Source: Adineta vaga (lineage: Eukaryota > Animalia > Rotifera). Taken from it: a stretch of DNA of 64,000 nucleotides. The notes beneath the pieces were generated by a model. That model was not told where the DNA came from. It did no database searches and was given only the letters and a program-made list of their open reading frames with translations. The position numbers and the translations under genes were made by a program. Shown here piece after piece: positions 16,868 through 20,582 of this stretch. The stretch spans positions 1,550,001 to 1,614,000 of the forward strand of contig CP075496.1 in the NCBI GenBank assembly GCA_021613535.1, in the 5' to 3' direction. How positions within the stretch are numbered: the first letter of the stretch is position 1; each line of letters opens with the position of its first letter.

Positions 16868-17537
16868 TTGTACTTAAATCAATTCATTTCTTTAATTCTT
16901 ATTCATTACATTGGATTCAAATATTTTCGACAAATCAATTCAAAATATGCATCATTATTTCTCTCCTGTAATACTTGTTTCGCAATTATTTGTTCGAATT
17001 GTACATTAATATTAATGACATTATCAACAATCGGTGGAGATTTTCATATAATTCTTTTAAAAGAACTTTCATTTTGGATTTGTTCCTTTCTTTTAATTCT
17101 ACTTGTTTTAATTTCTGAAAAAGATTATTCATCTTTGATTATTTATCTTCCCAATGAATTCTATTGTCAAGTACCAATGACAAGTATTCGTGAAATTAAT
17201 TTTTCAATTCTTAGCGTTTATTTCGTTCCATTATGTTGTATTGGATTGATTTATTTTGGGATTATTCTTTATATACGACGTCGAAATAATTCATTTTCTA
17301 TTATATTTACATTGGACAGCTTATCGACTTGGTTGGATGACAATTTCTATCTCATTTTCATTGACTAGTCTTTCGTCACTTTATGTAACACCGGAAATTT
17401 ATAAAACAATACGAACTATGTTGAGAACATCGTTACAAAATCCAAGTCGTTCGCGACTAATGATGAATCAGTTGGATAGACAGAAAACAAATGAAAAAAT
17501 AGGGATTCATCCAAAGACAACGACGAGTGCAAGTTGA
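16868..17537 (+). pseudogene. Decayed rhodopsin-class (7TM) GPCR with internal deletions and a frameshift
   Basis: TM2-like LFLSCNTCFAII, TM4-like FWICSFLLILLVL, ECL2 YLPNEFYCQVP, TM5 YFVPLCCIGLIYFGIILYIRRR in one frame; TM7 YRLGWMTISISFSLTSLSSLYVTP in another frame. TM3 and TM6 appear absent, and there is no clear ATG. Confidence 0.6.
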
Positions 17538-17884
17538 TTATGTGAAAAAAAGTGAATTTCCTACGAGAAATTTTTGAGTTTATAAATGTTTGATAAGAGA
17601 AATTGTTATTAAAAGTGGCTTCTTTTATGTTATGGAAAAGTCTATTTCATATAGGTAATTTTGCAAATAAACTCATTTTTCTTTCTCGTCTGTGGTTGTT
17701 TAAAGTTAAATAATATTGAAGAAAAGACGTTTTTTTTTCTTTTCTAAAAAAAACCGTCGAGTGAGGTTACTATGCCACCTCAAGTTTAACATTCTTTGCA
17801 GTAAAAGAAAAAGAAAAAAAGAACATTTGCAAGTTTGAACAAAAAACCAGCAATTTTTTTTTATCATTGTAAAAGAGGAAAAAA

Positions 17885-18746
17885 ATGGATCGAAAATTTA
17901 TCGGAATACGACGACGATTATCATCTCGACATACACAAACAATTGTTCAATTAGTTATTGCTTCAGTTCTTTCCTTTGCACTTATTTATATTTCAATCAA
18001 ATATGTTTATCCCTCAGTATCGAATTATATGATTCCAACAACTCGTCCGACAACAACAACAACAACAAAAGCAACAACAACAATAAGAAAAACGACAATA
18101 AAACAAGCATTCGGTAAAATTTGAATTTCGTATAAAAGTAATTCCTTTTTTTTCTCTTCTTGAAGATATCGGATGTTTTTTTCATCAAACAAATATAACA
18201 CTTGTTGATGGATCAACTCGTTCATTAGATTCGTTAAATATTGGTGATAAAGTTCTTGTTTATCATCCATCCGGACAACTTCATTCAAGTACAATCTTAA
18301 CCATTTTTCATCATCAACGTTCATCAGTTCGATTATTAGATATTTATACAATCAATCAACACGAACCACTTCGTCTTACACCATTTCATTCAATTCTTAC
18401 ACGAAAATCAACTTCAAAACAATCGACATTTCATTATGATTTTGCATTGAATATTGCCATTGGTGATTTTGTCTTATCATCAAACTTTCAATCATTAAAA
18501 GTGACAAATATCAAAGAAATTATTCTTTATAATCAAACAATTTCAACACCATTAACATTTGAAGGAAATATCATCGTAAATAATCTTATCGCTTCATGTT
18601 ATGCGACTTATCAACATAAATTCATGCATTTATTAACCATACCAATTCGTTATTGGTATCAATTAGGAAACTTTCCTCGATTGAATCATTTTCTTATTGA
18701 TCTAATTGAATTTTATTCGAAAATCAATTTTTTCAATCTTTCGTAG
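17885..18746 (+). CDS. Hedgehog-related Hog (Hint+SRR) domain protein with N-terminal hydrophobic anchor and Thr-rich stalk, no Hedge domain (269 aa, 2 exons)
   Basis: Exon1 17885-18113, intron 18114-18165 (GT-AG), exon2 18166-18746. Junction gives KQAFDIG|CFFHQTNITLVDGSTRSLDSLNIGDKVLV (Hint block A), LRLTPFHSIL (TxxH), PLTFEGNIIVNNLIASCYA (Hint C-terminus), HKFMHLLTIPIRYWY (SRR-like). Confidence 0.88.
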
Positions 18747-18847
18747 AAACCTTTGATTTCGTTTTTTTCTTCTTCTATTCTTCTCGAACAATTTAGTTTT
18801 CTTTTATTTGAAAAGAAAACAAACGATACATATTCCTTTATAAAGAA

Positions 18848-20582
18848 TTATTCTTCTTTTGAAATCTTTCGAATTCGTTCAGTTTTATCTGAATCAACTT
18901 GTCGATGACGTTGTTGTTGATACGATCCTGTTCGTCGATGATAATTTGTTGACAAAAATGTTTTGAAACTTTGATATTTTTGTCTCAATAAAATTGGTCG
19001 AGTTTTTTCACGAAGTTTATCACGTAGAACACTTGATGTTGTAGAAATATTTCCCAAAAATAGAATGAAAAATATTATTGCTAACACATAAACTTGCCAT
19101 TCATGTGTTGTTGATAGATGAGCTAATTTCCATAAAGCATATGCGTTATATAATTGAAATAAATAACCAAAGAGAAGAAATGGAACCAAAAATGAAAGAC
19201 CACCTTATAAAAAAAATGAAATCATATTTTTATTGAAGAAAGAAGTTTTCGAAAACTTACGAAACATCCAACGATGAAATCCTTCGATAGTTATATCCAT
19301 ATCATGTGTTTCTCCTAATGCTCGAAGACGATAGAGACAACCACGTTGATAATAGAATTGTAAACCCTAGAATAAATTTCATTATCTTATTTTGTAAACG
19401 AAGAGATGAAAGAATGTTTTCTTACTTGAACAAAACTAAGATAGAATGAAAAAATAAAAAATTGTGTACGGAATGTTTGATAAGATAACGAATCGGGCCA
19501 TGTTAATAGAATACCTGTTGCTACTGTTGCTATAAAATGATGAGCTCTCCACCAAGCTAGAAAGAGAAATGACTGGAATATATTAAAGAAAAAGATTTAA
19601 AGAATATTACGATTTATATTTGATCCATTAACAAGAAGAATTGATTCACGTATTGTTAAGGTACAATAATACCAAACAAGTAAGAAATGAAATAAAGCAT
19701 CAAATGCTCGATAACGTGATGTTAATGACCATATAACAAGAGACGAAACTAATGAGATACACGTAACAATAAATTTGAATTTTTCATATTCTTGTTTATA
19801 AGTCCATTTTTCTGCTTTATTTAAGATCGAAACATCCACACCACCGAGAATAACTCTTAAATAAGGATCTTTTCGAGGTAATGTATCCGAGATTCTTGAA
19901 AGATATAACTGATTCGTTTCTAATTGTTGAGAAATGAGATTCAATCGTTCAGCAGCTGTTAATGTATCAACTAGTTTATCGAATGAAGGTGATGAATTAA
20001 CTGATATTAATGGACGTAAATGAGGTGAGGATGGAATTGCAAATGAAGCATTTCTATTGAGAGATAGATTAGATGTTGAAAGAGAATTTTTTCGAGTTCG
20101 AAGATTTGAATTAGTTCGATTTTTCTTAGTTTCTTCTTCTAAATAAACGAAAAATTTATTCTTAAAACTAAAACATTTCAATCATTTCGGTTTCTTTTAC
20201 CTTTTTTTGCATATGATTTCCGTAATTGAGCAACATCTTTTTGTAATTGTTTGATTTTCTTATTATATTTATTAAAATCCTGTCTATATTGTGTTTTTAA
20301 TGATTCAACTTTATCTAATTTTTCTACATATTCTTTATGTTTGGGTTCGAATATACGTATTTCTCCATCAAGTGCTAACCATTCGTCATATAATCGATTT
20401 AATTTCTTATCTTCAAATGTTTCAATCGTATTTTTCATTATGGTTTCTTGATTATCCAATGAACTCGTTGATGATAACGATATTGGATGTCCTTCATCAT
20501 CATCTTCTTCTTTTTCCGAATTCACCAGATGAAAATGACTTTTTTTATCATTTTCTATATTAAATATCGTATCTGTTGTCAT
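18848..20582 (-). CDS. TMEM120: TMEM120 (TMPIT/TACAN) family membrane protein
   Basis: [90 protein letters not shown] are TMEM120 hallmark motifs; 5 exons. Confidence 0.92.

What the first reader, a model, noticed from the sequence alone, without database searches (positions are those of the whole stretch)
17885..18746. Hedge-less Hog protein: membrane anchor + mucin stalk + Hint/SRR, predicting a doubly anchored autoprocessed product
Seen: basic N-terminus (RRRLSSR), a ~22-aa hydrophobic segment, a Thr-rich stalk (PTTRPTTTTTTKATTT), then G79|C80-F starting a full Hint domain (C1, T69, H72 and the second Cys in ASCYA retained) followed by an SRR-like tail. There is no Hedge signalling domain or other globular N-domain. 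Known: Hog domains cleave at G|CF and attach a sterol to the new C-terminus. Inference: processing gives a ~79-aa type II membrane protein anchored by a TM at one end and a sterol at the other, with an O-glycosylated linker (tetherin-like topology). If the hydrophobic segment is instead a cleaved signal, the product is a lipidated mucin-like peptide. The ORF track misses this gene because the Hint N-half lacks its own start codon. This is the best candidate for an undescribed system in the window.
Basis: partly seen in the sequence, partly recalled or inferred. Interest (0 to 1): 0.85.

Follow-up and report, generated by a model that had tools for sequence, protein, structure and literature searches.

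The report
Membrane-anchored threonine-stalk Hog protein of a rotifer
This is a real, expressed two-exon gene of the bdelloid rotifer Adineta vaga encoding a membrane anchor, a threonine-rich stalk and a hedgehog-type self-cleaving (Hog) domain; it belongs to a large, unstudied rotifer family of such proteins, and this kind of architecture has been catalogued before in nematodes and choanoflagellates.

Summary
Exon 1 (17885-18113), a 52-nt GT..AG intron and exon 2 (18166-18746) encode a 269-aa protein identical to an annotated Adineta vaga "hypothetical protein".

- **Parts:** a basic tail, a roughly 19-22-residue hydrophobic segment, a Thr-rich stalk, then G79|C80-F opening a Hint module (Pfam PF01079, E 2.4e-26). 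The model matches Drosophila Hh-C at TM 0.84. A short, conserved SRR-like helix-loop-helix follows.
- **Catalytic residues:** C1, T69, H72 and the second Cys are kept. Asp46, the base that activates the sterol, is not. His125 sits there, followed by clade-invariant His126.
- **Transcripts:** RNA-like contigs from two studies cover both exons without the intron. They show no alternative upstream exon.
- **Family:** the architecture is conserved in Adineta, Rotaria and Didymodactylos. A. vaga has about 39 Hint loci and no Hedge domain over the Pfam cut-off. At least 14 loci have a Thr-rich tract just upstream.

The signal-anchor reading is favoured and self-cleavage is likely. Sterol addition, and therefore the double anchor, remains an inference. 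It is not an undescribed kind: Bürglin (2008) already lists "T-hog", "Short-hog", "Hog only" and the Thr-rich Hoglet. I class it as a new variant (transmembrane-tethered, rotifer expansion). Another note of this scan (s1-494285) reports a second membrane-tethered Hog gene in this genome.

The parts
17841..17884 (+). 5' untranslated region (minimum extent); in-frame TAA at 17870-17872 closes the frame upstream of the ATG
   Evidence: RNA-like contig of run X2 lies on 17858-18012, and its 17 loose letters resemble 17841-17857. Sequence read.
17885..18113 (+). Exon 1 coding part: residues 1-76 plus the first base of codon 77
   Evidence: Translation; identical to the N-terminus of P0001; covered by RNA-like contigs X1 and X2.
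17885..17941 (+). Basic N-terminal tail (residues 1-19, net charge about +5), predicted cytosolic; motif RR[LI]xxR[HY] conserved in orthologues
   Evidence: Alignment A1; charge count.
17942..17998 (+). Hydrophobic core (residues 20-38), predicted type II signal anchor
   Evidence: Best 19-residue window has mean Kyte-Doolittle 2.4 and a rough insertion energy near 0. AlphaFold helix 4-41. Relatives have the same segment internally.
18035..18097 (+). Thr-rich stalk core (residues 51-71, 13 Thr in the 41 residues after the TM); (ACA)n-rich DNA, apparently length-polymorphic
   Evidence: Translation. Model disordered over 42-78, pLDDT below 50. Thr-rich in all full-length orthologues. The RNA contig is 3 nt shorter here.
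18114..18165 (+). Intron, 52 nt, GT..AG, phase 1
   Evidence: Sequence. RNA-like contig X1 has 69 letters where the genome has 124 between 18040 and 18165, which fits 52 nt of intron plus 3 nt of repeat. The database protein P0001 matches this splice.
18166..18746 (+). Exon 2 coding part (rest of codon 77, residues 78-269, stop TAG at 18744-18746)
   Evidence: Translation; Pfam Hint E 2.4e-26; RNA-like contigs X1, X2 and X3.
18171..18176 (+). Predicted autocleavage site G79|C80
   Evidence: Aligned to G257-C258 of Drosophila Hh. Cys is present in 131 of 131 aligned Hog domains; Gly precedes it in 20 of 25 clade members.
18174..18602 (+). Hint module (residues 80-222)
   Evidence: Pfam. PDB sequence hits 6tyy, 6td6 and 1at0. 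AlphaFold pLDDT 75-91. Foldseek to 1at0/6tyy: TM 0.84, rmsd 2.2-2.3.
18306..18314 (+). F124-H125-H126, the place of the Hh general base Asp46. H125 is the aligned column by three methods; H126 is invariant in the clade
   Evidence: HMMER against 6tyy, MAFFT and hhalign place H125 at D46. HMMER against wild-type 6td6_B places F124 there. Column counts.
18378..18389 (+). T148-P-F-H151, the TXXH motif (T69/H72 of Hh-C)
   Evidence: His is present in 131 of 131 domains and Thr in all 25 clade members.
18597..18599 (+). C221 in A-S-C-Y-A, equivalent to C143 of Hh-C (branched-intermediate thioester)
   Evidence: Role of C143 from PMC12054796.
18603..18743 (+). SRR/ARR-like tail (residues 223-269), predicted helix-loop-helix with conserved H227, M230, H231, P236, R238, W240, Y241
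   Evidence: Pfam profile matched to position 203 of 213. hhalign aligns both helices to the Hh SRR motifs. AlphaFold helices 227-243 and 247-268, pLDDT 58-65. Invariant columns.

Best explanation
The gene encodes a 269-aa precursor of a bdelloid-specific family of Hedge-less Hog proteins (a "T-hog" type).

The proposed mechanism has five steps.
1. The long hydrophobic segment (residues 20-38), behind a strongly basic tail, acts as an uncleaved type II signal anchor. The tail stays cytosolic. The Thr-rich stalk and the Hog domain enter the ER lumen.
2. The Hint module performs an N-to-S acyl shift at G79-C80, helped by T148 and H151. The acyl group may pass to C221 as in Hedgehog.
3. The thioester is resolved by a lipid nucleophile held by the SRR-like helices, most likely a sterol activated by His125 or His126. 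Failing that, water resolves it.
4. The products are a free 190-aa Hog fragment and a 79-aa membrane protein whose roughly 40-residue, probably O-glycosylated stalk ends in a lipid-esterified Gly.
5. That product would be held in the membrane at both ends.

Shown here: the gene model, transcription, the domain and its fold, the catalytic residues, conservation, and the family context. Inferred: topology, cleavage, the adduct, glycosylation, and any biological role (perhaps a short surface mucin).
For: - Gene model and identity with P0001.
- RNA-like contigs from two studies cover both exons, lack the intron and show nothing upstream of about 17841. Introns of the neighbouring gene are spliced out in the same contigs, so these runs hold RNA.
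- Hint module by Pfam, PDB sequence hits and fold.
- C80, T148, H151 and C221 are conserved. Their roles come from PMC12054796.
- His occupies the D46 column by three alignments. D46H Hh autoprocesses in cells (PMC12054796). His is the majority residue at that column in 106 other natural Hog domains.
- The SRR helices are conserved and align to the Hh SRR.
- Signal anchor: hydrophobic length, charge, a conserved tail motif, and internal TMs in relatives.
- N-x-T sequons at N86 and N196 are kept in most orthologues, which fits a luminal Hog domain.
- The architecture recurs. TM or signal peptide plus poly-Thr plus Hog is seen in Rotaria, Adineta and Didymodactylos proteins, and at 14 or more A. 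vaga loci.
- The clade is monophyletic (SH-aLRT 97).
Against: - No biochemical data exist for any rotifer Hog protein.
- Asp46 is absent. The aligned column is Arg, Asn or Tyr in 12 of 25 clade members, and one alignment puts Phe124 there. Sterol transfer could therefore be lost while cleavage is kept.
- The two closest A. vaga paralogues have Pro instead of Gly before the Cys.
- The Hog domain is far better conserved (about 72% identity Adineta-Rotaria) than the N-product (30-50%). This could mean the Hog part, not the stub, is the functional product.
- No signal-peptide or topology predictor was available. A cleavage after S46 cannot be excluded.
- The SRR part of the model has only moderate confidence.
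Confidence: 0.6

Rival explanations
1. Cleavage without a sterol. The Hog domain only cuts itself off, by hydrolysis or transfer to some other nucleophile. This leaves a singly anchored 79-aa stub and releases a soluble Hog fragment. The purpose would be regulated shedding or release of the conserved Hog part, with no second anchor.
For: - The Asp46 general base is missing, and the aligned column varies (H, R, N, Y) within the clade.
- In Hh, D46 is the residue assigned to cholesterol activation, while C1 and TXXH make the thioester (PMC12054796).
- The Hog part is much more conserved than the N-part.
- For nematode Hog proteins the adduct is likewise unknown, hence the name "ARR" (PMC2362128).
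Against: - The SRR-like helices are strongly conserved and align to the Hh SRR motifs. That is hard to explain if no lipid is recruited.
- His at column 46 supports autoprocessing in Hh.
- His126 is invariant next to it.
Confidence: 0.22
2. The hydrophobic segment is a cleaved signal peptide. Processing then gives a secreted or membrane-associated Thr-rich peptide of about 33 residues carrying a lipid, like the nematode T-hog and Short-hog predictions.
For: - P-S-V-S|N after the hydrophobic segment offers small residues at -3 and -1.
- A relative (P0055) has a classical short N-terminal signal followed by poly-Thr and Hog.
- Bürglin predicts signal peptides for the nematode short Hogs.
Against: - The hydrophobic core is 19-22 residues and the preceding tail is 18-19 residues with net charge +5. 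Both are long for a signal peptide.
- The tail carries a motif conserved across genera.
- The putative cleavage motif is not conserved in orthologues.
- Relatives have the TM 60-70 residues inside the protein.
Confidence: 0.12
3. No processing. The protein is a membrane-tethered, catalytically idle Hint domain displayed on a mucin-like stalk, acting as a binding module.
For: The two closest paralogues have Pro at -1, which is unfavourable for the acyl shift. No activity data exist.
Against: In the clade, C80, T148 and H151 are invariant and C221 is nearly so (22 of 25); Gly79 is kept in 20 of 25. Such conservation of a complete catalytic set is unexpected for an inactive domain.
Confidence: 0.05

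Closest known systems
XC Thog ("T-hog") and Short-hogs of Enoplea nematodes (Xiphinema, Trichinella), Bürglin 2008, PMC2362128
   Same: No Hedge, Wart, Ground or Qua domain. A secretion signal, then a short N-terminal region (79 residues in XC Thog, about 70 of them Thr/Ser), then a Hog domain.
   Different: Those N-termini are predicted to have cleaved signal peptides. Here the hydrophobic segment looks like an uncleaved type II anchor with a conserved cytosolic tail. The host is a different phylum. The rotifer clade forms its own branch.
Hoglet of the choanoflagellate Monosiga ovata (Snell et al. 2006, as cited in PMC2362128)
   Same: A Hog domain behind a long poly-Thr stretch, with no Hedge domain.
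   Different: Hoglet has about 200 Thr residues and a region resembling a cellulose-binding domain, and is described as released. There is no transmembrane tether.
Hedgehog C-terminal autoprocessing domain (Drosophila Hh-C, PDB 1AT0/6TYY; SHH-C)
   Same: Hint fold (TM 0.84). G|CF site, TXXH and the second Cys. SRR motifs (AH..P.R and the aromatic second helix).
   Different: No Hedge signalling domain. Asp46 is replaced by His125-His126. The SRR loop is much shorter (47 residues in all). The substrate end is tethered to the membrane.
C. elegans Hog-1 and the warthog, groundhog and quahog families
   Same: A lineage-specific expansion of Hog proteins in an animal genome without a recognisable Hedge domain.
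   Different: The nematode N-domains (Wart, Ground, Qua) are Cys-rich globular modules. Many rotifer members carry Thr-rich stalks, and some carry a small Cys-rich peptide.
Tetherin/BST-2 (from my own knowledge, not tested here)
   Same: The predicted end product would have an N-terminal TM and a C-terminal lipid.
   Different: Tetherin has a GPI anchor and a structured coiled-coil ectodomain. Here the second anchor is hypothetical and the 40-residue linker is disordered. This is a resemblance of topology only, with no homology.

Membership tests
Hog domain proteins (Hint module PF01079 plus SRR/ARR) | Score over the Pfam Hint gathering threshold | tested here: met
   93.1 bits against a cut-off of 29.7, E 2.4e-26, profile positions 12-203 of 213.
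Hog domain proteins (Hint module PF01079 plus SRR/ARR) | Hint fold | tested here: met
   AlphaFold model with pLDDT 75-91 over residues 80-222. Foldseek to 1at0/6tyy: TM 0.84, rmsd 2.2-2.3.
Hog domain proteins (Hint module PF01079 plus SRR/ARR) | Catalytic Cys1 in G|CF, the TXXH motif, and the second Cys (C143) in SCYA | tested here: met
   G79-C80-F81, T148/H151 and C221.
Hog domain proteins (Hint module PF01079 plus SRR/ARR) | Asp46 general base for sterol activation | tested here: not met
   There is no Asp. His125 is at the aligned column, or Phe124 by one alignment. His is a functional substitute in D46H Hh and is common in natural Hogs (62 H against 30 D).
Hog domain proteins (Hint module PF01079 plus SRR/ARR) | C-terminal sterol/adduct recognition region after the Hint module | tested here: met
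   A 47-residue tail. hhalign aligns both helices to the Hh SRR. Conserved H227, M230, H231, P236, R238, W240 and Y241. Predicted helix-loop-helix at moderate pLDDT.
Hog domain proteins (Hint module PF01079 plus SRR/ARR) | Autoproteolysis with transfer of an adduct | not testable with these tools
   Needs expression and mass spectrometry.
Hedgehog proper | N-terminal Hedge (HH_signal, PF01085) domain | tested here: not met
   Exon 1 has no Pfam hit. The whole genome has no PF01085 match over the cut-off; the best is 17.5 bits, E 0.17, and is not near a Hint locus.
T-hog class of Bürglin 2008 | Secretion signal, Thr/Ser-rich short N-region, Hog domain, nothing else | tested here: met
   The one departure is that the signal looks like an uncleaved anchor.
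Inteins / bacterial intein-like domains | C-terminal Asn and a downstream extein with a nucleophile for splicing | tested here: not met
   The protein ends after the SRR-like tail, so there is no C-extein. The PDB sequence search returned only Hedgehog chains; inteins appear only as fold matches, with TM scores mostly below those of 1at0/6tyy.
Doubly anchored (TM plus lipid) surface proteins, tetherin-like | Uncleaved N-terminal TM and a covalent C-terminal lipid on the mature protein | tested here: inconclusive
   The TM is supported by hydrophobicity, charge and homologues. The lipid is inferred only.

The most novel reading that the evidence does not exclude
Bdelloid rotifers lack a Hedge domain and instead carry about 40 Hog genes. 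A bdelloid-specific clade of these makes type II membrane precursors whose self-cleavage esterifies a sterol to the end of a short O-glycosylated Thr stalk. The result would be mini-mucins held in the membrane by a TM helix at one end and a sterol at the other. No sterol-modified protein is known to have this topology. The recurrence of poly-Thr plus Hog in rotifers, nematodes and choanoflagellates would then point to lipid-anchored mucin-like stalks as a general, perhaps ancestral, substrate of Hog domains.
Probability: 0.25. Interest if true: 0.7.

Novelty: new variant of a known kind. Interest (0 to 1): 0.45.

Why it matters
Only Hedgehog ligands are firmly known to be made by Hog-domain cholesterolysis. 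What the many Hedge-less Hog proteins attach, and to what end, has been open since they were found in nematodes.

This rotifer clade offers compact natural test cases:
- The substrate is only 79 residues and is already tethered to the membrane where sterols reside.
- A natural His sits at the general-base position that was engineered in D46H Hedgehog.
- Close relatives carry Arg at that position, or Pro at -1, and can serve as built-in comparisons.

It also adds a second animal group, besides nematodes, with a large Hog expansion and no detectable Hedge domain. It is a third independent or ancestral pairing of poly-Thr with Hog. If the double anchor is real, it would be a new way to build a surface glycoprotein.

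Tried and rejected
- **Alternative upstream exon.** RNA-like contigs show nothing between 16000 and about 17840 in X1 and X2, and only one 3-fold contig belonging to the upstream region in X3. An in-frame TAA lies 15 nt before the ATG. Rejected.
- **Hedge domain elsewhere in the genome.** PF01085 found nothing over the cut-off, even at E up to 10. The tool's prokaryote controls cannot validate this search, so absence is provisional.
- **Close duplicate (ohnologue).** None found. The nearest paralogues are 45% identical, on C1.
- **Literature on rotifer Hog or Hedgehog genes.** Four searches found nothing on the point in the held library. This does not show that none exists.
- **Fixing the residue equivalent to Asp46.** HMMER against 6tyy, MAFFT and hhalign give H125. 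HMMER against wild-type 6td6_B, and an ungapped comparison with the sister "A-I-D-I-Y-Q" group, give F124. H126 is the invariant residue. Model coordinates are not returned by the tools, so distances to C80 could not be measured. Left open.
- **Signal peptide versus anchor.** No SignalP or DeepTMHMM was available. I used only length, charge and a rough insertion scale written from memory, plus homologues.
- **RNA status of the runs.** The runs are marked "RNA? (a guess)". I take them as RNA only because three introns of the neighbouring gene are spliced out in the same contigs. The splice of this gene is not listed as a joint, because the Thr-codon repeat next to it was skipped by the tool.
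- **Sterol supply.** One single-exon triterpene cyclase ORF exists. It was not followed, so nothing is concluded about sterol synthesis.
- **Not run.** Complex prediction and a second fold were not needed.
- **Joined spliced protein.** The joined step is left out. The 269-aa database protein P0001 returned was used where a full-length sequence was needed.

Full report
**What is there.** The window is Adineta vaga chromosome piece C4:1550001-1614000, at about 30% G+C.
- On the + strand an ATG at 17885 opens exon 1. It is preceded by an in-frame TAA at 17870.
- A donor G|GTAAAA at 18114 and an acceptor TTGAAG| at 18165 bound a 52-nt phase-1 intron.
- Exon 2 runs from 18166 to a TAG at 18744-18746.
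That step is left out.
- The search with exon 2 returned a 269-aa NCBI protein (P0001, hypothetical protein I4U23_017614, Adineta vaga). It is 100% identical over exon 2, and its first 76 residues equal exon 1.

**Transcription.**
- Three runs from two studies hold contigs on this gene. In the same contigs three introns of the convergent neighbour (19202-19258, 19366-19424, 19557-19610, CT..AC) are removed, so the material is RNA.
- Contig 1 of X1 lies on 17960-18040 and on 18165-19201, with 69 letters between them where the genome has 124. That is the 52-nt intron plus 3 nt, one Thr codon, of the (ACA)n repeat that the tool skipped.
- X2 covers 17858-18012. Its loose end resembles 17841-17857.
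- X1 and X2 hold nothing between 16000 and about 17740.

**The domain.**
- Exon 2 scores 93.1 bits on Pfam Hint (PF01079, cut-off 29.7) over profile positions 12-203 of 213. Exon 1 has no Pfam hit.
- The only solved relatives by sequence are Hedgehog C-domains: 6tyy, 6td6, 1at0 and 7e2i.
- An AlphaFold model built on 18 relatives gives a helix over 4-41 and a disordered stretch over 42-78. The β-rich Hint module spans 80-222 (pLDDT 75-91), followed by two helices, 227-243 and 247-268 (pLDDT about 60).
- Foldseek matches 1at0 and 6tyy with TM 0.84 and rmsd 2.2-2.3. Bacterial intein-like (BIL) domains and inteins also match as Hint folds, mostly with lower TM scores.
- A profile-profile comparison with 14 Asp-bearing Hedgehog-like Hog domains gives probability 99.9%. 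It extends through both SRR helices.

**Catalytic residues.** PMC12054796 defines the Hh-C active site as C1, D46, T69, H72 and C143. C1 and TXXH make the thioester, D46 activates cholesterol, and C143 forms a branched thioester.
- Here C80, T148, H151 and C221 match C1, T69, H72 and C143. They are invariant or nearly so in the clade.
- Asp46 is not kept. The local sequence is F124-H125-H126.
- HMMER against 6tyy, MAFFT over 131 Hog domains, and hhalign all put H125 at the D46 column. HMMER against wild-type 6td6_B puts F124 there.
- In the 25-member clade the column is H in 13, R in 10, N in 1 and Y in 1. The next residue, H126, is invariant.
- Among the other 106 Hog domains retrieved, the column is His in 62 and Asp in 30. 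His is thus a common natural occupant, and D46H Sonic hedgehog still autoprocesses in cells.
- Cleavage chemistry is therefore intact. The sterol-transfer step is plausible but not secured.

**The N-terminal part.**
- After a tail of 19 residues with net charge about +5 comes a hydrophobic core, residues 20-38, within an uncharged run over 17-38.
- About 40 residues follow, 13 of them Thr.
- Orthologues in A. steineri, A. ricciae, Rotaria sordida and R. socialis, and in unnamed metagenome contigs, keep the same plan. They share a tail motif RR[LI]xxR[HY], a Y-P after the helix, a Thr-rich stretch of variable length, and a conserved [DE]-[IL]-G|C-F junction.
- A conserved tail, a long h-region and a long charged n-region argue for an uncleaved type II signal anchor.
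- Relatives agree. In P0057 the same helix lies at residues 68-92. In the A. vaga paralogue L016 the open frame extends some 70 residues upstream of the helix.
- N-x-T sequons at N86 and N196 are kept in most orthologues, which fits a luminal Hog domain.
- No topology predictor was available, so this remains an inference.

**Family context.**
- The A. vaga assembly has 54 exon-level Hint matches, which I group into about 39 loci.
- There is no HH_signal match over the cut-off; the best is 17.5 bits. Several Patched-family loci are present.
- This gene is single-copy. Its nearest paralogues (45% identity, C1 at 13.33 and 13.38 Mb) are single-exon TM + T17 + Hog genes with Pro instead of Gly before the Cys.
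- A Thr-rich tract lies on the same strand within 1.5 kb upstream of the Hint start at 14 or more loci. Four of them (this gene, L016, L018, L048) also show a hydrophobic helix just before it.
- Another group has a signal peptide and a Cys-rich peptide of about 35 residues before the Hog domain.
- In a quick maximum-likelihood tree of 131 Hog domains the 25-member clade is supported at SH-aLRT 97. It joins an Asp-bearing group of 8, which also has poly-Thr N-termini, at 95.
- Every named member of these groups is a bdelloid: Adineta, Rotaria or Didymodactylos. The ESM Atlas neighbours are also rotifer Hint clusters.
- Another note of this scan (s1-494285) describes a Hog domain on a membrane-tethered knottin array at the Hint match C4:165749-166129. 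I confirmed only that the Hint match exists.

**Comparison with what is known.** Bürglin 2008 (PMC2362128) classifies Hog proteins by their N-termini. The classes include "T-hog", "Short-hog", "Enop-hog" and "Hog only".
- XC Thog of Xiphinema has a signal peptide and a 79-residue N-region, about 70 residues of it Thr/Ser.
- The choanoflagellate Hoglet has a 200-residue Thr stretch.
- The paper calls the repeated appearance of poly-Thr "striking".
- The kind of architecture is therefore catalogued.
- New here are the transmembrane tether with a conserved cytosolic tail, the natural His-His at the general-base place, and the size and taxon of the expansion. I found no paper on any of these in the held library.

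**Mechanism and odds.**
- I put self-cleavage at G79|C80 at about 0.75.
- I put an uncleaved type II anchor at about 0.75.
- I put a sterol or similar lipid on Gly79, given cleavage, at about 0.5.
- The full doubly anchored product therefore comes to about 0.25-0.3.
- One observation cuts the other way. The Hog part is about 72% identical between Adineta and Rotaria, while the N-product is 30-50%. The released Hog fragment, or the act of shedding, could be what selection sees.

**Verdict.** This is a new variant of a known kind, of moderate interest.

Noticed in passing
window 18848-20181 (- strand): A convergent neighbour is a TMEM120A/B homologue (Pfam PF07851, E 2e-36 and 3e-19 on two exons). 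Introns 19202-19258, 19366-19424 and 19557-19610 are confirmed in RNA contigs. Its stop lies about 100 nt from the Hog gene's stop, and assembled RNA contigs run across both genes.
   Followed up: partly
window 18041-18098: The Thr-codon (ACA-rich) repeat of the stalk seems length-polymorphic. The RNA contig of run X1 is 3 nt shorter than the assembly, and DNA contigs of run X9 break on both sides of it.
   Followed up: partly
L016 (G000:C1:13329875-13330465, -) and L018 (G000:C1:13380562-13381068, +): The two closest paralogues are single-exon TM + 17xThr + Hog genes. They have Pro, not Gly, before the catalytic Cys (T-T-P|C-F), which is an unfavourable residue for the acyl shift.
   Followed up: partly
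L006-L009, L012, L013 (e.g. G000:C1:15037258-15039456; C2:1118981-1120841): A second Hog subfamily occurs in tandem pairs. Each member has a signal peptide, a Cys-rich peptide of about 35 residues (4-6 Cys) and a Hog domain. His sits at the D46 column, and Asn replaces the second Cys (S-N-Y-A).
   Followed up: no
G000 whole genome; best weak hit G000:C4:14510489-14510680: No Hedge (HH_signal) domain scores over the Pfam cut-off in the A. vaga assembly, although there are about 39 Hint loci and several Patched-family loci. The only weak hit (17.5 bits) is not next to a Hint match.
   Followed up: partly
L038 (G000:C1:17657229-17661217): Two near-identical Hog genes lie in inverted orientation about 2.5 kb apart, both starting S-S-S-S-C-F-A-R-D. 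They look like a palindromic duplicate.
   Followed up: no
G000:C1:10786520-10787515 (-): A single squalene/oxidosqualene cyclase match (PF13243, E 6e-60) sits in a 750-aa uninterrupted open frame. It bears on whether the animal makes its own sterols or hopanoids. Its origin was not examined.
   Followed up: no
window 16868-17537 (+ strand): The upstream ORFs look like a multi-pass membrane protein and have no Pfam family. Only one 3-fold RNA contig lies there.
   Followed up: no
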